Below, piece after piece: positions 4,239 through 28,332 of a stretch of 64,000 bases of DNA; position 1 is the first letter of the stretch; every line of letters starts with the position of its first letter. This stretch comes from Ranitomeya imitator. Lineage: Eukaryota. A program made the position numbers and the translations under genes. The notes beneath the pieces were generated by a model that was not told the origin of the DNA, made no database searches, and was given only the letters and a program-made list of their open reading frames with translations. Where the stretch lies: the NCBI RefSeq assembly GCF_032444005.1, contig NC_091283.1, positions 169,508,001 to 169,572,000 on the forward strand, given 5' to 3'.

Positions 4239-4280
4239 GGCGGGATATAGACGTAGGACCTATGGATGGGGCGCCCTGCT

Positions 4281-8600: not shown

Positions 8601-11600
8601 CGCAAGATCATGACGTATCGGTCTCGCGAGACCGCTACGTCATCATCTCACGAGACCGCAATGCACTCTTCAGACCGGAGCGCGCGAGGAGCGTCGGTAA
8701 CTGCTTCGCTTGGATCCGGGGGACAACGGAGGGTGAGTATATAACTATTTTTTATTTTAATTCTTTTTTTTAACAGGGATATGATGCCCATATTGCTATA
8801 TACTCTGTGGGCTGTGCAATATACTACGTGGGCTGCTATATACTACGTGGCTGTGCTATTTACTACGTGGCCGGCCGCGAACAATCAGCGACAGGTGCAG
8901 TCCGGCCGCAAATTGGCGCGGGATTTGAACCACGCTTCGCTAATTGGTCGCGGCTATATAATTTGTCGGTCTACTATATAATTGTCAAAGGGTCACTTCC
9001 GTCTGTCTGTCTTTCTGTCTGTCACGGATATTCATTGGTCGTGGCCTCTGTCTGTCATGGAAATCCAAGTCGCTGATTGGTCGCGGCAAAACAAAAAGAA
9101 AATGGCCGCTCCTTACTCCCCGCAGTCAGTGCCCGGCGCCCGCATACTCCCCTCCAGTCACCGCTAACACAGGGTTAATGCCGGCGGTAACGGACCGCGT
9201 TATGCTGCGGGTAACGCACTCAGTTACCGCCGCTATTAACCCTGTGTGTCCCCAACTTTTTACTACTGATCCTGCCTATGTGGCATCAATAGTAAAAATA
9301 TGTAATGTTAAAAATAATAATAAAAAAAAAACCTGCTATACTCACCCTCCGTTGTCCAACGATCCTCTCGCGCCTGCCGCCATCTTCCGTTCCGTGCGGA
9401 AGATGGCGGCAGCTGCGTGCATATCGCCGGAGCTTCGGTGGATCCCAGGAGGTGAGCATATAACTATTTTTTTATTTTAATTATTTTTTTTAACAGGGAT
9501 ATGGTGCCCACACTGCTGTATACTACGTGGGCTGTGTTAGATACCGCGTGGCTGCTATATTCTACATAGGCAGTGTTATATGCTCCGTGGGCTGTGCTAT
9601 ATACTGCGTGGGCTGTGCTATATATTACGTGGCCACTGTTATATACTGCGTGGGCAGTGTTGTATACTACGTGACTGGGCATTATATACTACGTGACTGG
9701 GCAATTTACTACATGGCTGGGCAATATACTACGTATATACAATATATTGCCCAGTTATGTAGTATATTGCCCAGCCACGTAGTATATTGCCAAGTGACGT
9801 AGTATATTGCCCAGTGACGTAGTATAGAGGACAGAGCTACGTAGTATATTGCCCAGCCACGTATGTCACAGGTTAAAAAATAAACATATACTCACCTTCC
9901 GATCCGAGGGCCCCTTGTAGTTCTGTCGCCTGTTCGCGGTGCATGCGGCAGCTTCCGGTCCCAGGGTGTGATGACGTCGCGGTCACATGACTGTGACGTC
10001 ATGGCATGTCCTTCTCGCGCAGGCCCTGTGATGACATCGCAGTCACATGACCGTGACGTCATGGCAGGTCCTTCTCGCGCAGGCGCGCAGGACCTGTGAT
10101 GACATCGCGGTTACATGACCGTGACGTCATGGCAGATCCTTGTCGCATACCATCCTTAGCACCGGAACCTGCCGCTTGCATGGAGCAGTCACCGGAGCGT
10201 CGCGAAAGGTGAGCATATAATGATTTTTTTTTTTTTTTAATTATTTTTAACATTAGATCTTTTTACTATTGACGCTGCATAGGCAGCATCAATAGTAAAA
10301 ACTTGGTCACACAGGGTTAATAGCGGCGGTAACGGAGTGAATTACCCGCGGCACAACGCGGTCCATTACCGCTGGCATTAACCCTGTGTGAGCGGTGACT
10401 GCGGGGAGTATGGAGCGGGTGCCGACTGCAGGGGAGTAGGGAGGGACTAATCAGACTGTGGCCGTCGCTGATTGGTCGCGGCAGCCATGACAGGCAGCTG
10501 GCGAGACCAATCAGCGACTTGGATTCCATGACAGCCAGAGGCCGAGACCAATGAATATCCGTGACAGACAGAAAGACAGACAGACAGAAAGACGGAAGTG
10601 ACCCTTAGATAATTATATAGTAGATGTATGTGTCTATGTATATATACCGTATATATGTATGTATGTAATGTGTATGTTTGTATTGTATACATGTGTGTAA
10701 TGTGTTTATTCAGGCGGATGTACATATCGTACACGTGTGTATTGCACAGGGGCCCTTTTGTGGCCCGTGTCCACCCCCCGGTGTAATGGGCCCCTCACCT
10801 GTCGTACGGGCAGCTGGTGCTCTCTTTCACGGTGGTGTCGGTGCTGTCACTAATCAGCCAGTGACAGTCTGGGTCTGTGTATAAACGGAGGGACTTTGTC
10901 TTCTTCTTGGACAGGTAACTGCAGCCGGCGTTAAAGTCTCCCATTAAAATGATGTTCTGTTGAGAATAATAAAGTGTAAACCTATTGATCTGTGAAAACA
11001 ATGGAGCAATGAAGAGAACGACACGATGGAACCTGGAAACATCGATTATGAGGATAAGACATCGAGGGGATAGACGTCATTCACATATTTTATACGAGGA
11101 GGACAAAGCCGGAGTCCTGATGTAGCAATGTCACAGCTCAGATCCACCACACACACACACAGATATAGCCTTACATAGATCATGAATACAGAAGATCTGG
11201 ACCACCCCTTTAAGTCTACCTTACTGCTCCAGCGCTTTCGGACGTCCATGAACACATCATGAAGAGCTTGGAGTTCGATGGCGGCTTTTTCTGGCTCTGT
11301 GTGCTGCGGGATTATGACCAGATCCTGCAGATCTATAGAGAGAGATCAGTGTTATAAACCCCCCGCAGCCGCTGATCCCTAGATCCCTGTAATCATTACA
11401 CATGATGACTGACGGTGCGACGTCTCGGCTCATCCTGGTCACTGACCTCTCGATTGCAGAGCGAAGCGAACGATGTATGGTTCTCGGGCAAACACGTCTG
11501 GAGCGGCCGGATCATCATCTTCATATTTGTACTGATCGATCACTGAGATCTTCAATGACCTAAGAGGGGATATCCTAAAAATATCAGAAGGGTGCAGGAA

Positions 11601-12543
11601 GCTGGGCACGACGCCATCCATCTTATGTGTTCGGGGGGGCGTCCTGGCTCTCCCCTGACATTAGAAAGGATGGCTCCCTCCTTCTACACATGCACATTGG
11701 GCTGAAGCGAGCATGCATGTGTAAACCCCTGTGAACACCTTTATAACCAAATTTCATAAAGAAAAATTAATTTAAAATTTTTAAAAAATCAATTCCGCAA
11801 TAGATCTCAGATCCCACCTGACGTTTGTGTGTCTTTATTACCATGGTAACAGACTTCAAACAAGTTCCATGTAGTCTGAGCCTCCAGTTGCATGTATGAT
11901 TGGTAGGAGAGAGGGAGAAGACCAAGGATGGCAGTGTGAGACTATACAGAATTTGCTTTTGGTCTGTTGCCAAGACGACAACATAGGTTTTCACTGGAGC
12001 TGCATACAGAAAACGGGATCTCTCTTAGCACTCACTTGTATATGAAGACGTATTGTTCTGTGTAGGACTTGCGTCCCAGCGGAGGGCTGTTCACAGCCAA
12101 GTACAAGTCTTCTACCCTATGGGGAGATATAAAGGGTTAACACTGGCCTGACATTTCCCGATTCTGCTACATGAACCTCCTCACCTGTTGAGGGCAGCCA
12201 TAAGTTTGGACACCGCGATTCCCTTTAGGTCACGCACTTCTTGCAGCAGGAAGATGTCACATCGTTGGATGATCTGTGCAAATAACATGGGAATTAAGGG
12301 CAAAAACCTCACCTCCTATGGGCGAGCCTGCCAGTGTGCGGCCCCCAATCACCTCTCTACCCGCTGTGGTCCCGTCTTAGTCTTTGGATCGGACCCCCTC
12401 CTTACCTTGACCACAGCGCTCAGGATATCGTCATTGGCGGCTTTTTTCTCCCCAAAGTACTGGCCATTGAATGCGCAGATCCTGAAGGGCCACGCGCAGG
12501 GCCACACAGTGCAGAGGACGAGGAGGTGGTACCAGCTGCCCAT
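5625..12543 (-). CDS. DNASE1L1: Deoxyribonuclease 1-like 1 (DNase X), 8 coding exons, 307 aa
   Basis: Exons (minus): 12543-12406, 12273-12185, 12116-12036, 11559-11447, 11332-11220, 10956-10799, 6008-5918, 5765-5625 (924 nt including TGA). Signal peptide MGSWYHLLVLCTVWPCAWP; motifs QEVRD, RKSYTEQY, AREPY, PQHTEP, GDFNAGCSY, CPYDR, VSDHYPVE. Hydrophobic C-tail ILLPSLTLIILGLLWI is typical of the membrane-anchored DNASE1L1. Synteny with TAFAZZIN and ATP6AP1 supports the call. Confidence 0.92.
6501..8097 (-). mobile_element. Tc1-superfamily DNA transposon, DD38E (Intruder-like), near full length
   Basis: TA TSDs (6499-6500, 8098-8099); ~190-bp TIRs starting CAGTACAGA. Transposase ATG at 7714, 1-bp insertion at ~7632-7637, ORF to 6664. 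38 residues between D (QQDND) and E (NPVE); first catalytic D reads E (WSEEYK). Confidence 0.9.
7832..7905 (+). mobile_element. Truncated T2-family (TTAA) MITE end inside the Tc1 element
   Basis: TTAA followed by AGGGAACCTGTCACC; interrupts and replaces part of the Tc1 subterminal region. Confidence 0.55.
8111..8952 (+). mobile_element. Non-autonomous Helitron-like element, copy 1 (3'-truncated)
   Basis: Starts A|TCTACTATATAATTG...GGGTCACTTCCGTCTGTC (5'-TC terminus after A). Internal hairpin TACTATTGATGCTGC...GCAGCATCAATAGTA and a ~21-bp internal repeat. No CTAG end seen. Confidence 0.55.
8970..9745 (+). mobile_element. Non-autonomous Helitron-like element, copy 2
   Basis: Same 5' end and module order as 8111-8952; ends in the GGGCTGTGCTATATACTACGT-type repeat run. 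Confidence 0.55.
9746..10624 (-). mobile_element. Non-autonomous Helitron-like element, copy 3 (inverted)
   Basis: Reverse complement of the same 5' end at 10624 (preceded by A). Joins copy 2 tail-to-tail in the repeat run. Contains ~60-bp repeats carrying TGACGTCA. Confidence 0.55.
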
Positions 12544-13033
12544 GATCGCCTAGAGGTCCCTATAAGACAAGAGGACTCACGGTCATCACTTCTGTACAAT
12601 CCTGGCGCTGAGCACTGCTGCAGTTCTGTTCCTCTGTGTCGGGGACTCTGATCAGGTTATACAGTAATCATTTTGCTTCATTTATGGACTTTACCCTACT
12701 TGGCAAAAGCGGTGTACAGCAGTGCAAACAACCGCCGGGCCCCGGGGAGCTCACACAGAGGACGGTGCACTCTTCTACACCCCCCGGACTATAGACGGCA
12801 TCTACCGCTGCACCACACACAACCAATATGCCCATACACAGCTGGTAGCACGTCCCATGGTGCCAGGATTCACCCGCTGGCACACCCTGCACGCTATCAG
12901 CATCTCCAACCATCAGCGTGGTGTCTCCGGAGAGCTCGCTTATCTCCAGCCCACCCTTGTGTCATCTCCCACACCCAGTGGCCACGACCTCGGAGAGACA
13001 GGCAGTCAGCAGGAGCTCGCTGGTGTCACATAC

Positions 13034-16000
13034 ATGGCCTCAGAGCATGGTAGTCACCCGCTGGCGTACGTCAAGCACTTTGTGTCTGGAGGGGTGGGAG
13101 GTGTGTGCCTCACCCTGGCCGGACAGCCCATGGACACCGTCAAGGTGAGTGCTGAGATGGGATCCTTTACCCCATGTCTCCCGGCTTCATTCCCTGCTCT
13201 CCTCCCTCTCTGCTTTTCAGCTCAGTCCCATTCGTGCCAATGGAGTGAGCTGCAATAACACGAACAAGCAACGGAAAAGTGAGGCGCCGTTTTCAATCCT
13301 GAACAATCCCTTTAAGTCGTACATTGAATTTATTGCAATGTCTGATCTATGGCAGGTGGCATGAAGTCACACGTCACTGCGGCCCACCATATAGTACTTA
13401 CCCCTGTACTGCAGCTATAAGCACAGGCAGACGTGGAGGGACTAATGTCTTATCTCTGGGTAGTGTCATTATCAGCCATGACCATGTGTCTGCCCACCGC
13501 TGACCACGTGTTCATACGTTACCATCTCATAAAGTGTCGCCATACGGCTAGGACATATGCCATACCACCCCTTTAATCGTTATATAAAAGAAAACTTTGA
13601 AAACTTTCCTATACAGTTGGAAATTCTTCAACTATTCTGCAGACCACTGCTTGCAGTCAGTGAATAGGAGCAGTCACAGGTTTAGACCCAATCCTTCAGG
13701 CCAGAATAGAGATGGCTGCTGTTGTGTAAAATATGATGTGTGGGAGGCGAAGACCAAGTGTGTACGTAGGGTAAGCTCCGGACACACACGCCAAGCACAA
13801 TCACAGGGATCGGCTCATCTGAAGGAGGCCAAAAAAGGGTCATTCTGACCTTCAGCAGACCTGTGAACCATAACAAAGGCACTTATTTATACAAGGGACC
13901 CCATGGGTGACATACAGGTGCATCTCACAAATTTAGAATATCATCAAAACGTTACCGTAATTTATTTCAGTTCTTCAATACAAGAAGTGAATCTCATATA
14001 TAGAATCATTACACACAGAGTGATCTATTTCACGTGTTTATTTCTGTTAATGTTGATGATTATGGCTTACAGCCAATGAAAACCCAAAAGTCATTATCTC
14101 AGTAAATTAGAATACTTTATAACATCAGCTTGAAAAATGATGGTAAAATCCGAAATGTTGGTCTACTGAAATGTATGTTCAGTAAATGCACTCAATACTT
14201 GGTCGGGGCTCCTTTTGCATCAATTACTGCATCAATGCAGCGTGGCATGGAGGCGATCAGCCTGTGGCACTGCTGAGGGGTTATGGAAGCCCAGGTTGCT
14301 TTGACAGCAGCCTTCAGCTCGTCTGCATTGTTGGGTCTGGTGTCTCTCATCTTCCTCTTGACAATACACTATAGATTCTCTATGGGGTTAAGGTCAGGAG
14401 AGTTTGCTGCCAATCAAGCCCAGTGATACTGTTGTTTGTAAACCAGGTATTGGTACTTTTGGCAGTGTGGACAGGTGCCAAGTCCTGCTGGAGAATGAAA
14501 TTTACATCTCCAAAAAGCTTGTCGGCAGAGGGAAGCATGAAGTGCTCTAAAATTTCCTGGTAGACGGCTGCGCTGACTTTGGTCTTGATAAAACACAGTG
14601 GACCTACACCAGCAGATGACATGGCTCCCCAAACCATCACTGATTGTGGAAACTTCACACTAGACCTCCAGCAGCTTGGATTGTGGCCTCTCCACTCTTC
14701 CTTCAGACTCTGGGACCTTGATTTCCAAGTCTAGTGTGAAGTGTCCACAGTCAGTGATGGTTTGGGAGCCATGTCATCTGCTGGTATAGGTCCACTGTGT
14801 TTTATCAAGACCAAAGTCAGTGCAGCCATCTACCTGGAAATTTTAGAACACTTCATGCTTCCCTCTGCCGACAAGCTTTTTGGAGATGGAAATGTCATTC
14901 TCCAGCAGGACTTGGCACCTGTCCACACTGCCAAAAGTACCAATACCGGGTTTACAAACAACAGTATCACTGTGCTTGATTGGCAGCAAACTCTCCTGAC
15001 CTCGCCTGCAAGAGGAAGATGAGACACCAGACCCAACAATGCAGACGAACTGAAGGCAGCTATCAAAGCAACCTGGGCTTCCATAACCCCTCAGCAGTGC
15101 CACAGGCTGATCGCCTCCATGCCACGCCGCGTTGATGCAGTAATTGTTGCAAAAGGAGCCTGACCAAGTATTGAGCGCATTTACTGAACATACATTTCAG
15201 TAGGCCAACATTTTGGATGTTAAAATCATTTTTTCAAGCTGGTGTTATAAAGTATTCTAATTTACTGAGATAATGACTTTTGGGTTTTCATTGGCTGTAA
15301 GCCATAATCCTCAACATTAACAGAAATAAACACATGAAATTGATCACTCTGTGTGTAATGACTATATAATATATGAGCTTCACTTTTTCTATTGAAGAAC
15401 TGAAATAAATTAACTTTTTGATGATATTCTAATTTTGTGAGATGCACCTGTATCTCACTACGCACCATATAGTGGGATATGTCGCCCATTTGTGTATACA
15501 GTGAAGAAAAGCCATCGGTGTGAACAGGGAGTCACGTGTTTGTGGCCTCTAATCATCTAACAGGGATTCCATTCACTGACAGCAAACAGGAATGAGAGTT
15601 TGAATATATGAGGACAGAGGTTTTTACACAGGGACCAGCTCCCCGGTGTCAGGAGGAACCTCGTCATTTTGCTGTTTAGGGAATGACTATATTTGCGATA
15701 GTGAAATGAGATATCGCCCAACCTGTCCCCACTTACCTGTGTAATTCCTGCACCTCCAGGTGAATCTACAGATCCAGGTCCGGCCGCCGGGAGGACAGAA
15801 GCTGCTGTATAACAGCACTGGGGATTGTTTTCGCAAGATCCTCTCCCAACAGGTGAATTTGGCCGAGAGACCACGATAGCGAGTGGTATAGGCACACCAC
15901 GGAGAGGACCACCCTGGCCCCCCGCTGTGCAGGGGAACTTCAGCACCCTTCCACTAAGGTGCACCTGGCTCCAGTCCTCTGCACAGCAGGGGGCACCGGG

Positions 16001-19000
16001 TGCGCAGCTCTGCCAGGAACACACAGCACTAAATAATGCTGCAGCCCCTTTCAGTGCTTGTTCACACAATGATTATTTCAGCGTTTTTACTGCAGTTTTC
16101 CCCCCTTGAGATCAGAATGGGTGAGCACCAAAGAAGCCAAAAATGCAGACATTCTGGGGCAGCTTCAGGCCATCGGCATCATTCTTCATGCAGAAAAAAA
16201 AAAGTTTCATGTGAACATATCCTAAATCCAAGTGTCCCAGAAATCAGATCCACACTCTTCACTTCCCAGAATAGAGGGATGTCTAAGTGCACAAGGAGGA
16301 GCAGATGGCACCAAGTGACACGGAAGAGCAGCTGTGCGTGTGCGGGGGGACGCTGGTCCTGTGCCATGGCCGCTGGGCACACAAGATAATCTGGATCACA
16401 CACTTACCATATAGATGGAAGAATAATCTTTTGGAAGACAGTTATGAACCCTGATCCTCCCATTAAATCACCCGAAACACAAGTGATGGCGGACCAGCTT
16501 AGAGCCTATGTTATATTGGATGCCTATGTAAATTATTCATCTGACCTAAAAGTGCAAATTATTTCATAATTGGGAGCGAAGCGGCTCCCTGACTGACAAA
16601 TAAACAACCGGATCGGGGACAGCGATCCACACATGCCCATGGCCGAGCCGGCCCTTCTGGCATTAGGTAGTGACAGGACTCCTGCATTTCCTAGTGGAGC
16701 CATGGAGAGGAGGCCAGCGGGGACGTGTGATGGGAAGGCGGACGGTGCGGACCCGGAGAACGTACAAGACCATGTACTACCTAATGCCGAGGTGGACACG
16801 ACACGGGTATGACGAGACACTAAATCCTCAGCTGAAGCCTGTGTGTCCGGCGTCCATATCTGCTCCCAGGGAAATCCAACCAAAGCAATCCTCAGAATCA
16901 GCAGAGAAACCAGCAAGCATCACTTTCTAGAGAGCCAGGGCCCAGTCCTGTAGGACGCACGTGTGTTCTGGGCTGGGGGTGAATGGCAGAGGTGGCATCT
17001 CTTATCTGCACTTATAAGAGACAGAGGGTAATATAGGGGACGCTGCCATATAGTGCAGCCACCGGATACCCAGGGCGACACGGGGGTGCAGGATACGCAG
17101 GGAGACACAGGGGTGCAGGATACACAGGGAGACACAGGGGTGCAGGATACACAGGGCGACACGGGGGTGCAGGATACACAGGGAGACACAGGGGTGCAGG
17201 ATACACAGGGAGACACAGGGGTGCAGGATACACAGGGAGACACGGGGGTGCAGGATACACAGGGCGACACGGGGGTGCAGGATACACAGGGAGACACAGG
17301 GGTGCAGGATACACAGGGAGACACAGGGGTGCAGGATACACAGGGAGACACAGAGGTGCAGGATACACAGGGAGACACAGGGGTGCAGGATACGCAGGGA
17401 GACACAGGGGTGCAGGATACACAGGGAGACACAGGGGTGCAGGATACACAGGGCGACACAGAGGTGCAGGATACACAGGGAGACACAGGGGTGCAGAATA
17501 CACAGGGTGACACAGGGGTGCAGGATACACAGGGAGACACAGGGGTGCAGGATACACAGGGAGACACAGGGGTGCAGGATACACAGGGAGACACAGAGGT
17601 GCAGGATACACAGGGAGACACAGGGGTGCAGGATACACAGGGTGACACAGGGGTGCAGGATACGCAGGGAGACACGGGTGCAGGATACACAGGGAGACAC
17701 AGGGGTGCAGGATACACAGGGAGACACAGAGGTGCAGGATACACAGGGAGACACAGGGGTGCAGGATACACAGGGAGACACAGGGGTGCAGGATACGCAG
17801 GGCGACACGGGGGTGCAGGATACACAGGGTGACACAGGGGTGCAGGATACACAGGGTGACACAGGGGTGCAGAATACACAGGGAGACATAGGGGTGCAGG
17901 ATACACAGGGAGACACAGAGGTGCAGGATACACAGGGAGACACAGGGGTGCAGAATACACAGGGAGACACAGAGGTGCAGGATACACAGGGTGACACAGG
18001 GGTGCAGGATACAAAGGGTGACACAGGGGTGCAGAATACACAGGGAGACACAGGGGTGCAGGATACACAGGGAGACACAGGGGTGTAGGATACACAGGGA
18101 GACACAGGGGTGCAGGATACACAGGGAGACACAGGGGTGCAGGATACACAGGGAGACACAGAGGTGCAAGATACACAGGGAGACACAGGGGTGCAGGATA
18201 CACAGGGTGACACAGGGGTGCAGAATACACAGGGAGACACAGGGGTGCAGAATACACAGGGAGACACGGGTGCACGATGACCCAGACCACTACATGGCGC
18301 ACTATACAGGGACATTCCCTGGCAGTATATCCGCCGCTTCCTCGCCTTACCTCGATATCCCGGGCCCCGGTCTGCGCTCTGCTTCCTCCCTCCGCTGTGT
18401 ATGACTCGGTAGTGACATAGGAGCTCGCACCCCCTGGTCCCAGGCAGTAAGCCGGCTGTATGACGCTGGGCGGGATCTGCAGGAGGAAGGAGACAGATCA
18501 GTTCCCTTATATAACATAGGCATACGGACATGATAATACAGGACCCCCACACGCAGGCCTGATGTGCACAGATGGATCCCGGATGTTATTTCTTAGTTTT
18601 TTCTGGAGATTTTGGGACAAATGATAAATCCGCCGCTGTCACTAATGCCCCATGTCTCTGGTTCCCGTACACGCATCTGTCAGCCCCGCACAGGGGATCA
18701 TTGGAAACCATGGAACGTCCTTTGTTACAGGTTTTCTTTATTCTTGCTTTCACTTTTTTATTGCACGCACATTTTAACATTTTTTAGCATTCTGTACTGA
18801 GGCCAGAAATGAGCCCACTGACCCACAAGGAATGCAAGGAAAAAAGCTATGTATATTTCACTGTAAACAATCATAAACTTGGGGGGGGGGGGGGGTGGAA
18901 ATGAAAAACGCTGAAAAACTCAGCGCTTTTCCAAAAATCATCACTGTGAACAGCACACGGACGCCATCCAAAATGGGTGAAAATAGATTAAAAAACAATC

Positions 19001-22000
19001 CGTTATTCTCATGCAGAATAAAACCTGACTTTTTGGGAATACAAGAGAATAAATTCCCACAAAAATGGGCAAAAAAGTGAGAAGAAAAAAAAACACAAAA
19101 ATAAAAATACAACATTTTTGCACACAGGACAATGAGTGAGATTACCTTTAGCTTGTTCCTACATGTTACATGCATTTAGTACTAATAGTGCTGCTTTTAA
19201 GCAGAGATGGAAATCGTCTTCCCAGATGCCCCTCTGGTCCCCCAGCTAATTCACCGCCCGGCCCGCTCCCTGATGTATGGCGGCTCCCCGATGTATGGCG
19301 GCTCCCCGATGTATGGCCGATCCCCGATGTATGGTGGCTCCCCGATGTATGGCCGATCCCCGATGTATGGCCGATCCCCGATGTATGGCCACTCCCCGAT
19401 GTATGGCCGATCCCCGATGTATGGCCGATCCCCGATGCATGGCCGATCCCCGATGTATGGCCGCTCTCCGATGTATGGCCGCTCTCCGATGTATGGCCGC
19501 TCTCCGATGTATGGCCGATCCCCGATGTATGGCCGATCCCCGATGTATGGCCGCTCCCCGATGTATGGCCGCTCCCCGATGTATGGCGGCTCCCCGATGT
19601 ATGGCCGCTCTCCGATGTATGGCCGCTCTCCGATGTATGGCCGATCCCCGATGTATGGCCGCTCCCCGATGTATGGCCGCTCCCCGATGTATGGCCGCTC
19701 CCCGATGTATGGCCGATCCCCGATGTATGGCCGCTCCCCGATGTATGGCGGCTCCCCGATGTATGGCGGCTCCCCGATGTATGGCGGCTCCCCGATGTAT
19801 GGCGGCTCCCCGATGTATGGCGGCTCCCCGATGTATGGCGGCTCCCCGATGTATGGTGGCTCCCCGATGTATGGCCGCTCCCCGATGTATGGCGGCTCCC
19901 CGATGTATGGCGGCTCCCCGATGTATGGCGGATCCCCGATGTATGGTGGCTCCCCGATGTATGGCCGCTCCCCGATGTATGGCCGCTCCCCGATGTATGG
20001 CCGCTCCCCGATGTATGGCGGCTCCCCGATGTATGGCCGCTCCCCGATGTATGGCGGATCCCCGATGTATGGCCACTCCCATCATGAGCATGCTGCAATC
20101 CGTGTGCTGTGTACCCCCAGTACGGAGAATTCGGGAGGAGTTTAGCCCCATGATTGCCCCCGTATATACCCTCCATAAGAAGCAGTTGTGTCCGGAGTGT
20201 AACCTCACAATTTCCTTTCCTCCATCAGGGTCTTAGGGGTCTTTATAAAGGGATGGGGGCCCCTCTGGCTGGAGTGACCCCAATAATGGCAATGACGTTT
20301 TTTGGCTTCAGTCTGGGGAAGAAGCTACAACAGAAACAGCCCCAACATATACTGAGGTGAGATAACAGATTTCCTAACAATTTCATCCAGTGAATTTAGT
20401 TTCTGGGAAAGCTGGGTGACAACCAATATCCTCACATGTTGCACCTGACTTTCCTAGGCTTCTGAGCATCCAGCTTTCCTAACCACTCAATGGTAATACA
20501 GGATATCTGGGCTGCCGATACTGGAAAAGCTGGGTGAAAACTCTGCTTTGTCAAAAACAGATGCATCAAAGATAAGAAATAATCTGCGATCTTCCACTAA
20601 TGTGTAATTTTTTTATGTTTCCCCGATGCCTCCGCCACAGACCGCACCAGGTGTTCTCGGCAGGGATGCTGGCAGGACTGTGCGCCGCTATAATCGGAAT
20701 ACCTGCAGAAAGGATCAAGTGCCTGCTGCAGGTAACGTACAAAAGACCTGCGGGTCCTGATCCTACAGCAGTGGTGTGCTAGATGTCCGGGCATGCTGGG
20801 AGTTGTAGTTTTCCAACAGGTGGCACACCACTGGGCTACATGATCAGCTGTGTCCTCGTCTCTTTCTAAGGCTCAGGCGAACAGTTCACGGAAGAGATTT
20901 TCGGGGCCTGTAGATTGTGCCAGGCAGCTGTTCCAGGAGCAGGGCATGCGAAGCTTGTACAGGGGTACGGTGCTTACCCTCCTGAGAGGTAACTACCAAC
21001 ATATCAAAATAATATGCTTTTAATTATGTAAGCGACAACCCCTATATATTGTGATACTAGAGGAGAGCCCTTCTCTAATATGGGGGGCGCACAGATTTCA
21101 GCGCGCCACTATTCCTGCAGCTTATCTGTAGGTAAGATGGGCACGTGGAGAGGTGTCCTCAGCTCCTAAAGTGAGGCAATGGCACCAGATCCGCCAATAC
21201 TTTACAATCGGCGGGGAAGATGGAGGATGAAGGGCCACAGAACTTTTTTTATTGCTGTTTTCCCCTTTGCTGTATTCCCTACACAATCGCACTTGCTGCG
21301 CAGGGAGCGTATGCTGGGTCCTGTGCCAGTGAATGGGGGCAGCTGTAGATCTGCTGCACAGTCAGACCACCACTGAGTGACGATGTATCCTAGCAATATG
21401 CAATCACTGTTCTAAATGGGACCAGACTTTAATTATGCAGATGGCTCCAGGACGGGGACTTGCACACAATGATCCACTGCGGAGAGGAAGGAGGGAACTG
21501 CACAGCAATGATCCAGTGCGGAGAGGAAGGAGGGACCTGCACAGCAATGATCCACTGCGGAGAGGAAGGAGGGACCTGCACAGCAATGATCCACTGCGGA
21601 GAGGAAGGGGGGACCTGCACAGCAATGATCCACTGCGGAGAGGAAGGAGGGACCTGCACAGCAATGATCCACTGCGGAGGGGAAGGAGGGACCTGCACAG
21701 CAGTGATCCACTACGGAGAGGAAGGAGGGACCTGCACAGCAATGATACACTGCGGAGAGGAAGGAGGGACCTGAACAGCAATGATCCACTGCGGAGAGGA
21801 AGGGGGGACCTGAACAGCAATGATCCACTGCGGAGAGGAAGGGGGGACCTGAACAGCAATGATCCACTGCGGAGGGGAAGGAGGGACCTGCACAGCAATG
21901 ATCCACTGCGGAGAGGAAGGAGGGACCTGAACAGCAATGATCCACTGCGGAGAGGAAGGGGGGACCTGAACAGCAATGATCCACTGCGGAGAGGAAGGAG

Positions 22001-25000
22001 GGACCTGCACAGCAATGATCCACTGCGGAGAGGAAGGAGAGACCTGCACAGCAATGATCCACTGCGGAGCGGAAGGAGGGACCTGCACAGCAATGATCCA
22101 CTGCGGAGAGGAAGGAGGGACCTGCACAGCAATGATCCACTGCGGAGAGGAAGGAGGGACCTGCACAGCAATGATCCACTGCGGAGAGGAAGGAGGGACC
22201 TGCAAAGCAATGATCCACTGCGGAGGGGAAGGAGGGACCTGAACAGCAATGATGCACTGCGGAGAGGAAGGAGGGACCTGCACAGCAATGATCCACTGCG
22301 GAGGGGAAGGGGGGACCTGCACAGCAATGATCCACTGTGGAGAGGAAGGGGGGACCTGAACAGCAATAATCCACTGCGGAGAGGAAGGAGGGACCTGCAC
22401 AGCAATGATCCACTGCGGAGGGGAAGGGGGGACCTGCACAGCAATGATCCACTGTGGAGAGGAAGGGGGGACCTGAACAGCAATAATCCACTGCGGAGAG
22501 GAAGGAGGGACCTGCACAGCAATGATCCACTGCGGAGGGGAAGGGGGGACCTGCACAGCAATGATCCACTGTGGAGAGGAAGGGGGGACCTGAACAGCAA
22601 TGATGCACTGCGGAGAGGAAGGGGGGACCTGAACAGCAATGATGCACTGCGGAGAGGAAGGGGGACCTGCACAGCAATGATCCACTGCGGAGAGGAAGGG
22701 GGACCTGCACAGCAATGATCCACTGCGGAGAGGAAGGGGTGACCTGCACAGCAATGATCCACTGCGGAGAGGAAGGGGGACCTGCACAGCAATGATCCAC
22801 TGCGGAGAGGAAGGGGAAATCTGCGATATGGGAAGGGCATCTCTAAACCAAACAACATTTGGTGGGACACCAGACCATCTTATATGCATTACGGACTCTG
22901 GTGGATGACATTGGGGGACAGATGGATTGTGCATTTAGTACTTTTAGGAATAAGCACATACTGTGGCCCATTCCTCTCTTCCCCCCCAAAGGCCTGAAGA
23001 CGCAGTTGGGGGCACAGCCAAGAGGACGCTCTGCTCTCCTGACAGTGTGCTTGTCTCCACTTGCTACATAACAATGGGGCATGGCTTCTTGCTGCCAGCG
23101 TGGGAGGCTGTCTATTTTACAAATTGAAGTATAGGTGCAGGGGACAAAGAGCCTAAGGCCAAATTCAGACATCCATACAGTTGTGTGAAAAGGTGTTTGC
23201 CCCCTTCCTGACTTTCTATTATTTTGCCTGCTTGTCACACTTAAATGTTTCAGATCATTAAACAAATGGAAATATTAGGCAAAGATAACACAAGTAATCA
23301 CAAAATGCAGTTTATAAATTAAGGTCTTTATTAATAAGGGGAAACATAAATCCAAACTTCCAGGGCCCTGTGTGAGAAAGTGATTGCCCCCTAATCCCAA
23401 TAACTGGTTGGGCCACCCTTAGCAGCAACAACTGCAATCAAGCGTTTGTGATAACTGGCAGGGAGTCTTTTACAATGCTCTGGAGGAATTTTGGCCACTC
23501 ATCTCTGCAGAATTGTTGTAATTCAGCCACATTGGAGGCTTTCCGAGCATTAACCGCCTTTTTAAGGTCATTCCACAGAATCTCAATTGGATTAAGGTCA
23601 GGACTTTGCCTAGGCCACTCCAAAGTCTTAATTTTGTTTTCTTATGCCATTCAGAGGTGGACTTGCTGGTGTGTTTTGGATCATTGTCCTGTTGCTTAAC
23701 CCAAGTGCACTTCGGCTTGAGGTCATGAACAGATGGCCGGACATTCTCCTTCAGGACTTTTTGACAGACAACAGAATTCATGGTTCCATTTACCCAAAAA
23801 AGTTTTTCAGGTCTTGAAGCAGAAAAACAGCCCTAGACCATCACATTACCACCACCATAGTTTACTGTTGGTATGATGTTCCTTTTCTGAAGTGCTGTGT
23901 TACTTGTACACCAGATGTAATGGGACATACACCTTCTAAAGAGTTCAACTTTTGTTTCGTCAGTCCACAGAGTATTTTCTCAAACGTCTTAGGGATCATC
24001 AAGAGGTTTTCTGGCAAATCAGAGATGAACCTTTATGTTCCTTTATGAACCTTATTGCTCAACAGTGGTTTTCTTCTTGGAACTCTGTCATGCAGGCCAT
24101 TTTTTGCCCAGTCTCTTTTTTTAAGCCTGTTTCACATGTATTGATATTTCCAGTACCGTAAAAAAAAAACAGTATCATAGATATCCGTAATACTTGTGGC
24201 ATACATGTGGCAACAGCGTGCCGCATCAGTAGCACACATACCAGCACCAGGAAAGCAGCAGTACAGTTAGCGCTGTTCCCCTGAACTGAAGACCGCTCGC
24301 ATCATTCTCCCCCGCTCTGCCGGCAATCAGGGGTGAATGATGAGAGTTATATTCAAATGATAACAGTGAGAGCAGGTGGTGGCTGATGGGAGTATTCATC
24401 AGCCGCCGACTGCGTTATAAATAAAACGGTGTGGGTTCCCCTGTATTTTTGACAACCAGCCAGGCAAAACTGACAGCTGCGGGCTGCAATGCTGAGCTGT
24501 CAGCTTCAGCAAGGCTGGTTATCAAGCATAAAGGGGTCTGCACTCTGTTTTTTTTTTAAATTATTTATATAAATAATAAAAAAAACCAGCATGATGACCT
24601 CTCTATTCTTGATAACCAGCCTTGCTGACAGCTGAGGGTTGCAGCCTGCAGCTGTCAGTTTTGCCTGGCTGGTTATCAAAAATACAGGGGAACCCATGAC
24701 GGTTTTTATTTATTTATAGCGAAGGCAGCGGCTGATGAATACTCCCATCAGCCATTGCCTGCTTTCACTGTTATTAGCTGCAGCAGGTGTAGGCTGATGG
24801 GAGTAGTAGTCCCATCAGCTGCCATCTGCTCTCACTTATCACTTGAATATAATGCTCAACATTTTCCCCTTCTCGTGCTGATCACCTGCAGAGCAGGGAG
24901 AATGATGAGAGCTGTCTTCAGCACCCGGGAACAGCGCTAACTGTACTGCTGCTTCCTAGGCGCCAGTGCGTGTCACACTGATGACACACGGATGTCATCC

Positions 25001-26980
25001 GCGTGCACGTGTGCGGGATGTTTTGCGGCCTGTGCTGCTGTTAAAAAACGGACATGTCAACGTATTTTTCCCGCGGACACACGGACTGTGGAAACACACT
25101 TTCATGTGCACAGACCAATGCACTTGAATGGGTCTACGTGTGTAAGTGTCTCCGGTACTTGTGAAAACTGTCATCACATGTACCGGACACACTGACGTCT
25201 GAAAAGAGGCGTCTGGTGGAGTCATGAACACTAACCTTAACTGAGGCGAGTGAGGTGGGCAGTTCTTTGGATGTTGTTGTGGGGTCTTTTGTAACCTCTT
25301 GGTTGAGTCTTTGCTGCGCTCTTGGGGTAATTTTGGTCGGCCGTCTACTCCTGGGAAGGTTCAACACTATTCCATGTCTTTGCCATTTGTTGGTAATGGC
25401 TCTCACTGTGGTTCACTGTAGTTCCAAAGCTTGAGAAATGGCTTTATAACCTTTTCCAGACTGATAGATATCAATTACTTTGTTTCTCATTTGTTCCAGA
25501 ATTTCTTAGGATAGTAGCATGATGTCTAGCTTTGGAGGATTTTTTGGTCTGCTTCCTTTTGTCAGGCAGGTCCTATTTAAGTGATTTCTTGATTGAGAAC
25601 AGGTGTGGCAGTAATCAGGCCTGCGAGTGGCTAGGAAATGTGAACTCAGCTTCCCAAGTCGTGATAAACCACAGTTAATATACGCTTTGGAGTTGGAAGG
25701 GGGGATAATCACTTTCTCATACAGGACCCTGTAGGTTTGGATTTCTTTTTTCCCTTAGTAATACAGACCTTCATTTCAAAACTGCATTTTGTGGTTATTT
25801 GTGTTATCTTTGTCTAATATTTAAATTTGTTTGGCGATCTGAAACATTTAAGTGTGACAAACATGTGGCATAGGAAAGCAAGAAGGGGGGAAATACTTTT
25901 TCACACATCCATATATAACAGACAGACCACAGGTCTACTGAAAGAGGAGAGCTGAAAGTGGAGCATCCCTTTAATAAAATGTCATAAATGTCTGTTAGAA
26001 ATGGGAATATGTTTTTAACAATTTTTGTTCCTCATTAAGATATCCCAGCCACCGGCATGTATTTCATGAGCTATGAATGGATGAAGGATAAGCTGGCACC
26101 AGACGGAGGCAGGTAAGCAGTGGTAAAGTAGATACCACAATGGCATATGGATGCCGGGTGGGAGAATGAGGGCAGTAGTACTATAATACAAAGTATGGAT
26201 GACTCTGTACTACACCCCTTACCATCCTGTTCTACCACAGCGCCCGTGACATCACTCCTGCACGGATTCTGCTGGCCGGAGGAGTGGCCGGTATGTGCAA
26301 CTGGGTCGTGGCCATTCCTGTGGATGTGCTCAAGTCACGTTTCCAGACAGGTGAATAGAGAAATTAATTATTTTGTGTCCTCTCTGGGTGGTGTCTGATT
26401 CTGTATGAGGGGTTCCCACCATGGAGGACTCTAGCCATTCACCTGGATGACCAAGATGTAACACCACATTTCCCCTGTAGTGGCCACGGCAGGGTAACTG
26501 CCTGGGCAGCCATGGCTTCCCCGGGACGATCAGTTGATTGGGGATGTGATCGCCCAGTCATTGACGAGGTGACATTGGCTCTAGCTAATGCATTTTACCG
26601 TCTTATTCCAGCTCCTGACAGCCGGTACAGGGGTGTCCTGGATGTTTTCAGGGAAGTCTTGCGAGATGAGGGACCCCGAGGACTGTATAAGGGGTTCACA
26701 GCGGCCATGTTACGAGCCTTCCCAGCCAATGCGGTGAGTGCAGGATCTGAAAGATACAACCACATCTCTTAATGCATCCAGTCCTGAAGCTCTGGGATTA
26801 TATTAGTGAACCCGGCAGCTCTGGATGAACACAGATAAAATAAGCAACACTACAGTCTATGAGGACAACACATGGAGATTTCCTGCTCAGTTTATCTTGG
26901 TTATTTTTAACTTTCAGGCTTGTTTTCTTGGATTTGAGGCTTCTATGAAGTTCTTACACTGGACGATACCAGAAGTGTGA
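13034..26980 (+). CDS. Mitochondrial carnitine/acylcarnitine carrier-like protein (SLC25A20 paralogue), 9 exons, 302 aa
   Basis: Exons: 13034-13144, 15760-15852, 20229-20356, 20641-20731, 20871-20988, 26040-26112, 26241-26350, 26612-26733, 26918-26980 (909 nt, GT-AG, no stops). Three SLC25 signatures PMDTVK, PAERIK, PVDVLK; CAC-type segments [53 protein letters not shown]. Divergence from human SLC25A20 looks too high for the true orthologue, so no symbol is given. Confidence 0.93.
13915..15450. mobile_element. Fold-back Tc1 (DD34E) derivative made of two inverted 3' halves
   Basis: TA-flanked ends CAGGTGCATCTCACAA...TTGTGAGATGCACCTG. Arms 13915-14665 and 14729-15450 are inverted copies that each carry the transposase C-terminus (SVMVWG...QQDLAPVH). 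Confidence 0.88.
17064..18274. repeat. 27-bp minisatellite (~45 units)
   Basis: Unit GGTGCAGGATACACAGGGAGACACAGG (9-aa periodicity in the ORF track); carrier intron 2. Confidence 0.95.
19264..20080. repeat. 18-bp minisatellite (~45 units)
   Basis: Unit CCCCGATGTATGGCCGCT with variants; ends ~150 bp before carrier exon 3. Confidence 0.95.
21462..22815. repeat. 39-bp minisatellite (~35 units)
   Basis: Unit GCGGAGAGGAAGGAGGGACCTGCACAGCAATGATCCACT; carrier intron 5. Confidence 0.95.
23178..25910 (-). mobile_element. Decayed Tc1 (DD34E) transposon interrupted by a MITE
   Basis: TA then CAGTTGTGTGAAAAGG end. Minus-strand transposase fragments ([38 protein letters not shown]); right end degenerate. 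Confidence 0.8.
24121..25212. mobile_element. ~1.1-kb Harbinger-type MITE nested in the Tc1 element
   Basis: Splits the Tc1 sequence GCCCAGTCTC...GGTGGAGTCATG. Imperfect TIR (GCCTGTTTCACATGT vs ACGTCTGAAAAGAGGC); strong internal palindrome around 24430-24700. Confidence 0.65.
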
Positions 26981-27011
26981 CCCCTGAATCCTGTCAAAAC
27001 TGTGCAGCACT

Positions 27012-28068
27012 CCAAGACCAGAGCGCTATGTGTATATGTCACCGCAAGACCAGAGCGCTATGTGTATATGTCACCACAAGACCAGAGCGCTATTTGTATA
27101 TGTCACTGCAAGACCAGAGCGCTATGTGTATATGTCACTGCAAGACCAGAGCGCTATGTGTATATGTCACTGCAAGACCAGAGCGCTATGTGTATATGTC
27201 ACTGCAAGACCAGAGCGCTATGTGTATATGTCACCGCAAGACCAGAGCGCTATGTGCATATGTCACCGCAAGACCAGAGCGCTATGTGTATATGTCACCG
27301 CAAGACCAGAGCGCTATGTGTATATGTCACCGCAAGACCAGAGCGCTATGTGTATATGTCACCGCAAGACCAGAGCGCTATGTGTATATGTCACCGCAAG
27401 ACCAGAGCGCTATGTGCATATGTCACCGCAAGACCAGAGTGCTACGTGCATACATCACCCCAAGACCAGAGCATTATGTGCGTGCATACATCACCCCAAG
27501 ACCAGAGCGCTTTGTGTGTGCATACATCACCCCAGGACCAGAGCGCTACTTGTATACATCACCCCAAGACCAGAGCGCTACGTGCATACATCACCCCAAG
27601 ACCAGAGCGCTACGTGCATACATCACCCCAGGACCAGAGCATTATGTGCATACATCACCCCAAGACCAGAGCATTATGTGCATACATCACCCCAAGACCA
27701 GAGCATTATGTGCGTGCATCACCCCAAGACCAGAGCATTATGTGCATGCATACATCACCCCAAGACTAGAGCGCTACGTGCATACATCACCCCAAGACCA
27801 GAGCGCTTTGTGTGTGCATACATCACCCCAGGACCAGAGCGCTACTTGTATACATCACCCCAAGACCAGAGCGCTACGTGCATACATCACCCCAAGACCA
27901 GAGCGCTACGTGCATACATCACCCCAAGACCAGAGCATTATGTGCGTGCATACATCACCCCAGGACCAGAGCGCTACGTGCATACATCACCCCAGGACCA
28001 GAGCATTATATGCGTGCATCACCCCAAGACCAGAGCATTATGTGCGTGCATCACCCCAAGACCAGAGC
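27012..28068. repeat. 32-bp minisatellite in the predicted carrier 3'UTR (two sub-arrays)
   Basis: CCAGAGCGCTATGTGTATATGTCACCGCAAGA units to ~27435, then CCAGAGCGCTACGTGCATACATCACCCCAAGA and 36-bp variants. Confidence 0.95.
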
Positions 28069-28110
28069 TTCCAGTGATGACTCTTAATAATTTTTTTACC
28101 CCCTGCTGCC

Positions 28111-28332
28111 TCTCCTCCAGACTGCCCAGGTGTTCTCGGCAGGGATGCTGGCAGCACTGTGCGCCCCCATAATCAGACTACCTACTAAATGGATCAAGTA
28201 CACAGGTCCTGTGGGTCCTGATCCTACATCAGTGGTGTGCAAGATGTCAGGGTATGCTGGGACTTGTAGTTATCCAACAGATGGCACAGCACTGAGCTAC
28301 ACTGGGTGATTCCAGAAGTGTGACCCCTGAAA
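28111..28332 (+). pseudogene. Decayed duplicate of carrier exon 4/intron 4 fused to the end of exon 9
   Basis: CCAGGTGTTCTCGGCAGGGATGCTGGCAG...GGGTCCTGATCCTAC...TTGTAGTT matches 20647-20840; CCAGAAGTGTGACCCCTGAA matches 26969-26988. Confidence 0.85.

What the first reader, a model, noticed from the sequence alone, without database searches (positions are those of the whole stretch)
13034..26980. Intact SLC25A20 paralogue wedged between DNASE1L1 and TAFAZZIN
Seen: a full 302-aa, 9-exon carrier with all three signature motifs. Known: human SLC25A20 is on 3p, human Xq28 has no carrier at this position, and 3p/Xq28 share paralogue pairs (FLNB/FLNA, DNASE1L3/DNASE1L1). CAC function depends on cardiolipin, which tafazzin remodels. 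Inference: a whole-genome-duplication ohnologue lost in mammals, giving a second acylcarnitine-type carrier next to the cardiolipin transacylase. This may be a little-studied mitochondrial lipid module.
Basis: partly seen in the sequence, partly recalled or inferred. Interest (0 to 1): 0.7.

Follow-up and report, generated by a model that had tools for sequence, protein, structure and literature searches.

The report
Second carnitine carrier gene beside tafazzin
This poison-frog window holds an intact, transcribed second copy of the mitochondrial carnitine/acylcarnitine carrier gene. It is an ancient duplicate that sharks, fishes and amphibians keep next to the tafazzin gene, that was not found in reptiles, birds or mammals, and whose function nobody has tested.

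Summary
A 9-exon, 302-aa mitochondrial carrier gene with all GT-AG introns lies at 13034-26980 on the + strand. A DNase I-like gene lies head to head with it, 490 bp between the start codons. Tafazzin starts 5 kb downstream.

The product is 100% identical to residues 60-361 of RefSeq XP_069604020.1, 'carnitine/acylcarnitine carrier protein-like' of Ranitomeya imitator. The gene is therefore already predicted in databases. I found no paper on it.

- **Not the sole copy.** The same species has a canonical SLC25A20 on another chromosome.
- **Ancient duplicate.** A likelihood tree splits jawed-vertebrate carriers into clade A (canonical, including all amniotes sampled) and clade B (two sharks, lungfish, amphibians, ray-finned fishes). 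Lamprey and hagfish fall outside both.
- **Conserved position.** Clade B lies directly upstream of tafazzin in gar, a wrasse and frogs. Clade A lies beside PRKAR2A and NCKIPSD.
- **Same gene structure.** Both clades share the same exon structure.
- **In use.** Spliced contigs show transcription, and dN/dS is 0.07-0.27.
- **Binding site.** Carnitine-binding and gate residues are all kept, but the acyl-chain pocket is remodelled.

The ohnologue reading is supported. The loss looks amniote-wide, but that rests on incomplete sampling. The 'lipid module' with tafazzin is untested speculation.

The parts
13034..13144 (+). Exon 1: start codon, helix 1 and first signature motif P-M-D-T-V-K
   Evidence: Pfam Mito_carr E = 2.8e-4. 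The upstream in-frame ATG used by the RefSeq 361-aa model is not conserved as protein in other frogs.
15760..15852 (+). Exon 2 (93 nt)
   Evidence: AG/GT borders, phase 0. The same 93-nt exon occurs in all A and B genes examined.
20229..20356 (+). Exon 3 (128 nt): helix 2, part of the acyl-chain pocket
   Evidence: It was the query of the representative search.
20641..20731 (+). Exon 4 (91 nt): second signature motif P-A-E-R-I-K and Cys136 equivalent
20871..20988 (+). Exon 5 (118 nt): Cys155 equivalent; the Arg178 equivalent is its last whole codon and the Asp179 codon is split between exons 5 and 6
   Evidence: Its 3' end is the loose end joined to exon 6 in contigs.
26040..26112 (+). Exon 6 (73 nt)
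   Evidence: The joint 26112/26241 is seen in four runs.
26241..26350 (+). Exon 7 (110 nt): third signature motif P-V-D-V-L-K and the N-W pair
26612..26733 (+). Exon 8 (122 nt): Arg275 equivalent. It carries the one-codon deletion (human Pro246) shared by the bony-vertebrate clade B genes examined
26918..26980 (+). Exon 9 (63 nt including the stop codon)
12544..13033 (.). 490-bp head-to-head interval between the DNase I-like start codon and the carrier start codon; a candidate bidirectional promoter (inferred)
   Evidence: The same arrangement, 494 bp, is seen in Dendrobates tinctorius. Transcription start sites were not determined.
5873..12543 (-). Proximal DNase I-like (DNASE1L1-type by position) gene
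   Evidence: Minus-strand exon ORFs lie at 12349-12543, 12181-12312, 11439-11621, 10795-11001 and 5873-6100. The Pfam Exo_endo_phos match is weak. The orthologous neighbours in Dendrobates and Rana are called as 307/306-aa Exo_endo_phos proteins.
31981..42112 (+). Tafazzin gene, the downstream neighbour on the same strand
   Evidence: tblastx against the 262/263-aa acyltransferase genes that follow the carrier in wrasse and gar. Pfam Acyltransferase matches two exons. The H-x4-D motif lies in the exon at about 33.3-33.5 kb.
28088..28331 (+). Degenerate partial copy: exon 4 plus intron 4 start (78% identical to 20605-20840), fused to a copy of the last 34 nt of exon 9 and followed by AATAAA
   Evidence: Contigs of runs X3-X5 cover this place (records 5, 8 and 10). 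It may be part of the 3' UTR beyond the 27.0-28.1 kb minisatellite; this was not resolved.

Best explanation
The gene is the Ranitomeya imitator member of a second, ancient lineage of carnitine/acylcarnitine carriers (here 'clade B', a sister of SLC25A20). The lineage arose by a DNA-level duplication in the stem of jawed vertebrates. The timing and the chromosomal neighbourhoods fit the second vertebrate genome duplication. Two sharks, a lungfish, amphibians and ray-finned fishes were found to keep it, and in bony vertebrates it sits immediately upstream of tafazzin. It was not found in amniotes. In this frog it is intact, spliced into RNA and under purifying selection.

Inferred mechanism. 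It is an inner-membrane alternating-access exchanger of the SLC25 type. It binds the carnitine head group with the same residues as SLC25A20: the equivalents of Arg178, Asp179, Arg275 and Asn223/Trp224, and Gln in place of His29. It closes with the same three salt-bridge pairs. Its acyl-chain pocket on helices 1 and 2 is remodelled, so its preference among acylcarnitines probably differs from the canonical carrier.

Shown here: gene structure, expression, selection, phylogeny, synteny and residue conservation. Inferred: substrate, mitochondrial location, whole-genome origin and amniote loss.
For: Gene model and motifs.

Identity: the model is 100% identical to residues 60-361 of XP_069604020.1 and 94.7% identical to the Dendrobates 'CAC-like' protein.

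Expression: contigs from four runs and three studies join exons 5 to 9 at the predicted sites.

Selection: dN/dS is 0.27 against D. tinctorius and 0.07 against Rana, with intact 9-exon genes in every species examined.

Phylogeny: in a tree of 79 rows, clade A has support 95/87 and clade B 99/94, and the jawed-vertebrate node that excludes lamprey and hagfish has 98/81. The AU test rejects a single amphibian clade, p = 0.0047.

Structure: the exon lengths are the same in A and B, so the copy is not a retrocopy. The bony-vertebrate B genes examined share a one-codon deletion in exon 8.

Synteny of B: gar GDI | carrier | 263-aa acyltransferase; wrasse MAGE | carrier | 262-aa acyltransferase; Rana DNase | carrier | 262-aa acyltransferase; Dendrobates DNase | carrier.

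Synteny of A: seahorse NDUFAF3-like | NCKIPSD-like | carrier | PRKAR2A-like.

Residues: D32, K35, E132, K135, D231, K234, R178, R275, W224, C136 and P78 are invariant in 25 A, 45 B and 7 outgroup sequences. D179, N223 and C155 each differ in a single sequence. His29 is Gln in all 19 amphibian B sequences. Gln is the only His29 replacement reported to keep wild-type-like activity (PMC8066319).
Against: No transport assay exists, and no paper on this lineage was found.

Clade B evolves much faster than clade A: frog versus caecilian is 63% identical in B and 83% in A. It has changed residues of the pocket reported to bind the acyl chain: V25 to T, C89 to T, and changes around M85/F86. Amphibian B has also lost the basic residue after the first signature motif (R37 to N). 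A changed substrate is therefore possible. SLC25A29, once called 'CAC-like', is now described as a basic amino-acid carrier (PMC10027655).

Within dendrobatids dN/dS is 0.27 on only 34 differences.

The runs are only guessed to be RNA, although spliced contigs argue for cDNA.

Amniote absence rests on capped hit lists. The whole-genome origin was not tested on chromosome scale.
Confidence: 0.75

Rival explanations
1. It is the single SLC25A20 orthologue of this frog, moved to the Xq28-like region.
For: It is the best match of carnitine-carrier queries and has the same 9-exon structure as SLC25A20.
Against: R. imitator has a separate canonical protein, XP_069592430.1 (P0302). It is 58% identical to this one, lies on a different chromosome record (L008) and groups with the canonical frog cluster. 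The tree puts the window gene in clade B, away from all amniote SLC25A20.
Confidence: 0.01
2. It is a recent or amphibian-specific duplicate of SLC25A20.
For: The amphibian branch is long and carries its own fixed changes: H29Q, R37N, T62I, L256V and V272A.
Against: Amphibian copies group with shark, lungfish and ray-finned fish copies with support 99/94. The AU test rejects one amphibian clade, p = 0.0047. The position upstream of tafazzin is shared with gar and a teleost. The exon 8 deletion is shared with fishes.
Confidence: 0.02
3. It is an ancient small-scale (segmental) duplicate of the jawed-vertebrate stem and not a product of whole-genome duplication.
For: The tree dates the event but cannot tell its scale. 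I could not show that flanking genes are duplicated in parallel. Only a GDI-family first exon lies head to head with both a B gene (gar) and an A gene (E. coqui), and which GDI paralogue each is remains unresolved.
Against: A lies among genes that I recall as human 3p21.31 genes (NDUFAF3, NCKIPSD, PRKAR2A). B lies among genes I recall as human Xq28 genes (DNASE1L1, TAFAZZIN, ATP6AP1, GDI1). From my own knowledge these two regions share several paralogue pairs; my paper searches did not retrieve a source for this. The intron structure is fully kept.
Confidence: 0.15
4. It is a carrier that has changed substrate (for example basic amino acids, or another quaternary amine) and no longer serves the carnitine shuttle.
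For: It evolves fast, helices 1 and 2 are remodelled, and R37 is lost in amphibians. The Arg-Asp contact pair also occurs in amino-acid carriers of the same subfamily, which is grouped as 'positively charged amino acid carriers' in PMC10027655.
Against: Every residue reported to bind the carnitine head group is kept. Position 29 carries the one replacement reported to preserve activity. Cys136 is invariant and Cys155 is kept in every jawed-vertebrate sequence compared.
Confidence: 0.15
5. It is a decaying or silent gene: an annotated ORF without function.
For: The lineage appears to have been lost in amniotes, and its rate is higher than that of clade A.
Against: The ORF and all splice sites are intact in every amphibian sequence looked at. 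dN/dS is well below 1. Spliced contigs occur in runs of at least two species labels.
Confidence: 0.03

Closest known systems
SLC25A20 (mitochondrial carnitine/acylcarnitine carrier, CAC/CACT), canonical clade A
   Same: About 58-60% identical. It has the same nine exons and phases, three Mito_carr repeats and three signature motifs. The salt-bridge residues, the Arg178/Asp179/Arg275 equivalents, Asn223/Trp224 and Cys136/Cys155 are the same.
   Different: It is a separate lineage since the jawed-vertebrate stem. Its genomic neighbourhood differs: tafazzin and a DNase I-like gene instead of PRKAR2A and NCKIPSD. The pocket residues are changed (V25T, C89T, the M85/F86 region). In amphibians H29 is Q and R37 is N. 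There is a one-codon deletion at Pro246. It evolves roughly two to three times faster.
RefSeq 'mitochondrial carnitine/acylcarnitine carrier protein-like' of amphibians and fishes, and the zebrafish-derived placeholder name si:dkey-150i13.2 carried by the Takifugu protein P0227
   Same: These are the same gene lineage. The window product equals XP_069604020.1 residues 60-361. The Takifugu protein with that name falls in clade B.
   Different: These are automatic predictions without a study. The RefSeq model of R. imitator adds 59 N-terminal residues from an upstream ATG, and these are not conserved as protein.
SLC25A29 (formerly 'CACL'), SLC25A45/47/48, SLC25A15/2
   Same: They belong to the same broad subfamily of carriers for positively charged substrates (PMC10027655).
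   Different: None of the best 120 hits of either search carries these names. The window gene nests inside the animal carnitine-carrier clade, above bivalve, hemichordate, rotifer and flatworm carnitine carriers. I did not place sequences of these families in the tree.

Membership tests
Mitochondrial carrier family (SLC25, Pfam PF00153) | Three tandem repeats of about 100 residues | tested here: met
   Three Mito_carr stretches, 247.6 bits, on P0313:60-361, which is identical to the model. Seven of nine single exons also match.
Mitochondrial carrier family (SLC25, Pfam PF00153) | Signature P-x-[DE]-x-x-[KR] on helices 1, 3 and 5 | tested here: met
   P-M-D-T-V-K, P-A-E-R-I-K and P-V-D-V-L-K in the translated model. 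The acidic and basic residues are invariant across 77 sequences.
Carnitine/acylcarnitine carrier subfamily (SLC25A20 type) | Falls inside the clade of animal carnitine carriers | tested here: met
   The tree is rooted on bivalve, hemichordate, rotifer and flatworm carnitine carriers. Vertebrate A plus B has support 98/97.
Carnitine/acylcarnitine carrier subfamily (SLC25A20 type) | Head-group binding residues Arg178, Asp179 and Arg275, and His29 | tested here: met
   R, D and R are kept. Position 29 is Gln in all amphibian B sequences. Gln is the only tested replacement reported to keep activity (PMC8066319).
Carnitine/acylcarnitine carrier subfamily (SLC25A20 type) | Hydrophobic acyl pocket (Val25, Pro78, Val82, the Met named Met-84 in the literature, Cys89) | tested here: inconclusive
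   Pro78 and Val82 are kept. Val25 is Thr, Cys89 is Thr and the Met is Ile in the window protein. The effect on chain-length preference is unknown.
Carnitine/acylcarnitine carrier subfamily (SLC25A20 type) | Carnitine/acylcarnitine exchange that depends on cardiolipin | not testable with these tools
   This needs reconstitution in proteoliposomes.
Orthologue of human SLC25A20 (clade A) | Groups with amniote SLC25A20 and lies beside PRKAR2A/NCKIPSD | tested here: not met
   The window gene is in clade B and lies between a DNase I-like gene and tafazzin. The canonical R. imitator gene is elsewhere. Clade A synteny is seen in seahorse.
Ohnologue from the vertebrate genome duplications | Duplication node after the split from cyclostomes and before the jawed-vertebrate radiation | tested here: met
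   Lamprey and hagfish fall outside A plus B (98/81). Sharks are present in both A and B.
Ohnologue from the vertebrate genome duplications | The two copies lie in paralogous chromosome blocks with other parallel gene pairs | tested here: inconclusive
   A has 3p21.31-type neighbours and B has Xq28-type neighbours. A GDI-family gene lies head to head with a B gene in gar and an A gene in E. coqui, but its paralogue identity is unresolved. No chromosome-scale test was possible.

The most novel reading that the evidence does not exclude
Clade B may be a functionally distinct carrier, with a different acylcarnitine range such as short or polar acyl chains, or another carnitine-like substrate. Its more than 400-million-year adjacency to tafazzin may reflect shared regulation, so that non-amniote vertebrates run a second carnitine shuttle tuned together with cardiolipin remodelling, and amniotes gave this shuttle up.
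Probability: 0.12. Interest if true: 0.6.

Novelty: new member of a known kind. Interest (0 to 1): 0.4.

Why it matters
SLC25A20 is treated in the literature I could search as a single-copy route for fatty acyl groups into mitochondria. These data indicate that most non-amniote jawed vertebrates, apparently including zebrafish and Xenopus, carry a second, faster-evolving carrier of the same type with an altered acyl pocket.

This bears on how slc25a20 knockdowns, and models of carnitine-shuttle disease, are read in fish and frogs, because the second carrier could compensate. It also offers a natural set of pocket variants for asking what sets chain-length preference. It is another case of an ohnologue lost on the amniote stem. 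It does not change the view of how such carriers work.

Tried and rejected
- **Single-exon search.** Searching one exon (E3, 42 aa) against the 50% representatives gave only 50-75% matches and many fragments. It served only to reach P0007 and from there the named proteins.
- **Look-ups with no record.** Xenopus tropicalis P0271 and Chanos P0274 had no record.
- **Look-ups with no neighbour in reach.** Shark (L002), caecilian (L005) and the canonical R. imitator locus (L008) showed no neighbour within 10 kb. Synteny in cartilaginous fishes and caecilians stays open.
- **GDI paralogue.** I tried to decide which GDI paralogue flanks the A gene of E. coqui and the B gene of gar. Only the 16-residue first exon lies in each locus, which is not informative.
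- **Papers.** Searches for the zebrafish placeholder name, for slc25a20a/b/l/-like and for an Xq28/3p paralogon source found nothing usable.
- **Solved structures.** No carnitine carrier structure is in the copy searched; the nearest are UCP1/2 and the ADP/ATP carrier. I did not run structure prediction, because the tools return no coordinates with which to map pocket residues.
- **N-terminal extension.** The 59-residue extension of the RefSeq model was rejected as coding, because its frame and sequence are not conserved in D. tinctorius, Phyllobates, R. variabilis or Rana.
- **Joined model.** I sent no joined model as typed letters to any search tool. The joined CDS was built only inside scripts from window coordinates. 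For tools that need a reference I used the identical database protein P0313:60-361.


Full report
**Observation**

Stop-to-stop reading of the + strand between 12.9 and 27.1 kb shows nine carrier-like segments. With the flanking splice signals they join into one open frame. The exons are:
- E1 13034-13144
- E2 15760-15852
- E3 20229-20356
- E4 20641-20731
- E5 20871-20988
- E6 26040-26112
- E7 26241-26350
- E8 26612-26733
- E9 26918-26980

All eight introns are GT..AG. The CDS is 909 nt (302 aa plus stop).

Pfam Mito_carr matches seven of the nine exons singly. It matches three repeats at 247.6 bits on the identical database protein. The three signature motifs are P-M-D-T-V-K, P-A-E-R-I-K and P-V-D-V-L-K.

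Much of the 14-kb span is taken up by three intronic minisatellites: period 27 at 17064-18278, period 18 at 19263-20080 and period 39 at 21455-22814. There are also Tc1-like transposase remnants.

**Neighbours**

Upstream, on the minus strand, a DNase I-like gene starts at 12543, which is 490 bp from the carrier's ATG. A second DNase I-like gene lies further upstream at about 2.1-4.24 kb. Its Pfam match is weak. The orthologous neighbours in Dendrobates and Rana are called as 307/306-aa Exo_endo_phos proteins.

Downstream, tafazzin starts at 31981 and runs to about 42.1 kb. tblastx against the acyltransferase genes that follow the carrier in wrasse and gar shows this. Pfam Acyltransferase matches two exons. 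Its peptides match what I recall of human tafazzin, including the H-x4-D motif; that comparison is from my own knowledge.

**Which genome, and is the gene known**

A phmmer search with exon 3 by reference led to P0007. A word search from P0007 led to many proteins that NCBI names 'mitochondrial carnitine/acylcarnitine carrier protein-like', in frogs, caecilians, salamanders, lungfish, gar, sturgeon, bichir and teleosts.

The model is 100% identical over all 302 residues to residues 60-361 of XP_069604020.1 of Ranitomeya imitator. It is 97.7% identical to R. variabilis and 94.7% to Dendrobates tinctorius. The window is therefore R. imitator, and the gene is already predicted in RefSeq.

The extra 59 N-terminal residues of the RefSeq model come from an upstream in-frame ATG. 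The corresponding stretches in D. tinctorius, Phyllobates, R. variabilis and Rana differ in frame and sequence. I read that stretch as 5' UTR and the 302-aa form as the conserved protein.

Full-text searches found no paper on this lineage. A paper on carrier gene structures that I read does not mention it.

**Expression**

Contigs of runs X3 and X4 (guessed RNA), X5 (same organism label as the genome) and X12 (another organism label) skip exactly 26113-26240, 26351-26611 and 26734-26917. Their loose end before exon 6 is the 3' end of exon 5. Spliced contigs cannot come from genomic DNA of this locus, so the gene is transcribed and spliced as modelled. Tissue, level and transcript ends are unknown.

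**Not the only SLC25A20**

The 90% cluster of canonical frog carriers contains R. imitator XP_069592430.1 (P0302), together with canonical proteins of R. variabilis, D. tinctorius, Phyllobates and others. P0302 is 58% identical to the window protein. It is encoded on a different chromosome record (L008).

**Phylogeny**

The likelihood tree has 79 rows under LG+C20+F+G4. It is rooted on bivalve, hemichordate, rotifer and flatworm carnitine carriers. Lamprey and then hagfish branch outside a jawed-vertebrate clade (98/81), which splits in two.
- Clade A (95/87) holds chimaera, sharks, a ray, canonical caecilian and frog proteins, teleost slc25a20 and every amniote sampled: lizards, a snake, a bird, a monotreme, marsupials and placentals.
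- Clade B (99/94) holds two sharks, lungfish, all amphibian 'like' proteins including the window's, a long-branched Xenopus tropicalis protein, sturgeon, paddlefish, bichirs, gar, bowfin and many teleosts. The teleosts include the Takifugu protein that carries the zebrafish-derived name si:dkey-150i13.2.

An AU test rejects joining all amphibian sequences in one clade: the log-likelihood is 27.9 lower, p = 0.0047. I named that group after seeing the tree.

**Gene structure**

Exact spliced mapping of eight proteins on their loci gives the same exon lengths in A and B: about 105, 93, 128, 91, 118, 73, 110, 122 or 125, and 63 nt. Lamprey has exons 4 and 5 fused. The duplicate therefore arose at the DNA level with its introns. 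Exon 8 is 122 nt in gar, wrasse, caecilian and frogs of clade B. It is 125 nt in clade A, in shark clade B and in lamprey. This is a shared one-codon deletion at human Pro246.

**Synteny**

Clade B:
- Gar: GDI (-), carrier (+), 263-aa acyltransferase (+).
- Wrasse: MAGE (-), carrier (+), 262-aa acyltransferase (+).
- Rana: DNase-type (-), carrier (+), 262-aa acyltransferase (+).
- Dendrobates: DNase-type (-), 494 bp upstream of the carrier.

Clade A:
- Seahorse: NDUFAF3-like, NCKIPSD-like, carrier, PRKAR2A-like.
- Several cartilaginous-fish clade A proteins carry a PRKAR2A name, which suggests merged neighbour models.

Lamprey has DCAF1 upstream. From my own knowledge, the clade A neighbours are human 3p21 genes, the clade B neighbours are human Xq28 genes, and in human DNASE1L1 and TAFAZZIN are direct neighbours with no carrier between them. 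I could not retrieve a paper that documents an Xq28/3p paralogon, and I could not test it on chromosome scale. The whole-genome origin therefore remains an inference, although the timing fits.

One unexplained detail is that a GDI-family first exon lies head to head with both the gar B gene and the E. coqui A gene.

**Selection and rate**

dN/dS is 0.27 against D. tinctorius (18 synonymous and 16 non-synonymous differences). It is 0.07 against Rana, where dS is saturated. The canonical gene gives 0.065 between R. imitator and E. coqui. Clade B is less constrained. Columns at least 95% conserved number 198 in A, 107 in amphibian B and 131 in fish B, out of 299. Frog versus caecilian identity is 83% in A and 63% in B.

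**Function inferred from residues**

Reviews of SLC25A20 list these functional residues (PMC9103206; PMC8066319):
- Arg178, Asp179 and Arg275 for carnitine binding.
- His29 for an H-bond to the substrate.
- Three salt-bridge pairs for the matrix gate.
- Cys136 and Cys155 for redox sensing.
- Val25, Pro78, Val82, a Met and Cys89 for the acyl-chain pocket.

In my alignment of 25 A, 45 B and 7 outgroup sequences, nearly all head-group, gate and redox residues are invariant. D179, N223 and C155 each differ in one sequence. His29 is Gln in all 19 amphibian B sequences but His in fish B. The review states that Gln is the only His29 replacement with activity comparable to wild type.

The pocket is changed. 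Val25 is Thr in amphibian B and Leu in fish B. Cys89 is Thr, Ser or Gly throughout B. The Met/Phe pair on helix 2 is altered. Amphibian B also has Asn for Arg37.

I therefore expect a working carnitine-type exchanger with a different acyl preference. This is an inference, and a change of substrate cannot be excluded.

**The 'module' idea**

The review says recombinant SLC25A20 is inactive without cardiolipin. It says the same of many other mitochondrial carriers, so that dependence is not specific to this one. The new fact is that the carrier-then-tafazzin order, on the same strand and 2.4-10 kb apart, is kept in gar, a teleost and frogs. That may reflect shared regulation or simple inertia. 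Tafazzin persists in amniotes, where no clade B gene was found.

**Limits**

- Amniote absence rests on hit lists capped at 120 rows. A very divergent amniote copy could have been missed.
- I sent no joined model as typed letters to any search. The identical database protein was used by reference, and the joined CDS existed only inside scripts.

**Verdict**

This is a real, expressed, conserved gene. The gene is known to annotation pipelines but uncharacterised. It is a new member of a known kind and of moderate interest.

Noticed in passing
window 28088-28331: A degenerate copy of exon 4 plus the start of intron 4 (78% identical to 20605-20840) is fused to a copy of the last 34 nt of exon 9. 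An AATAAA follows near 28.4 kb. Contigs of runs X3-X5 cover this place at depth similar to or above the coding exons. It may be the far end of the carrier's 3' UTR beyond the minisatellite, or a separate transcript.
   Followed up: partly
window 2100-4240 and 5873-12543, minus strand: Two DNase I-like genes lie in tandem upstream of the carrier. Human Xq28 has one DNASE1L1, as far as I recall.
   Followed up: no
window 6664-7656, minus strand: An uninterrupted 330-aa Tc1/mariner-type transposase ORF lies inside the proximal DNase I-like gene's span. Shorter Tc1-like remnants lie in carrier introns 1 and 5 (about 14.2-15.1 kb and 23.4-23.8 kb).
   Followed up: no
window 17064-18278, 19263-20080, 21455-22814, 27008-28068, 28823-30245: There are five long, high-identity minisatellites (periods 27, 18, 39, 32 and 29; 32-49 copies each) in the carrier's introns and in the carrier-tafazzin interval. 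Similar arrays appear in a tafazzin intron (about 37.8-40.4 kb) and upstream of ATP6AP1 (about 54.3-58.3 kb).
   Followed up: partly
L006:4356-4403 (E. coqui) and L001:5590-5637 (gar): A GDI-family first exon lies head to head with the canonical carrier in E. coqui (5.6 kb) and with the clade B carrier in gar (4.4 kb). If these are GDI2 and GDI1, the GDI-carrier pair was duplicated as a block.
   Followed up: partly
P0271 / P0325 (Xenopus tropicalis): The Xenopus clade B protein sits on a very long branch (0.7 changes per site) and is only 64% identical to the R. imitator protein. NCBI names it as the plain carrier, not '-like'.
   Followed up: no
L004 (Lethenteron reissneri): The lamprey carrier gene has exons 4 and 5 fused (209 nt). 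It lies between a DCAF1-like gene and an amidohydrolase gene.
   Followed up: no
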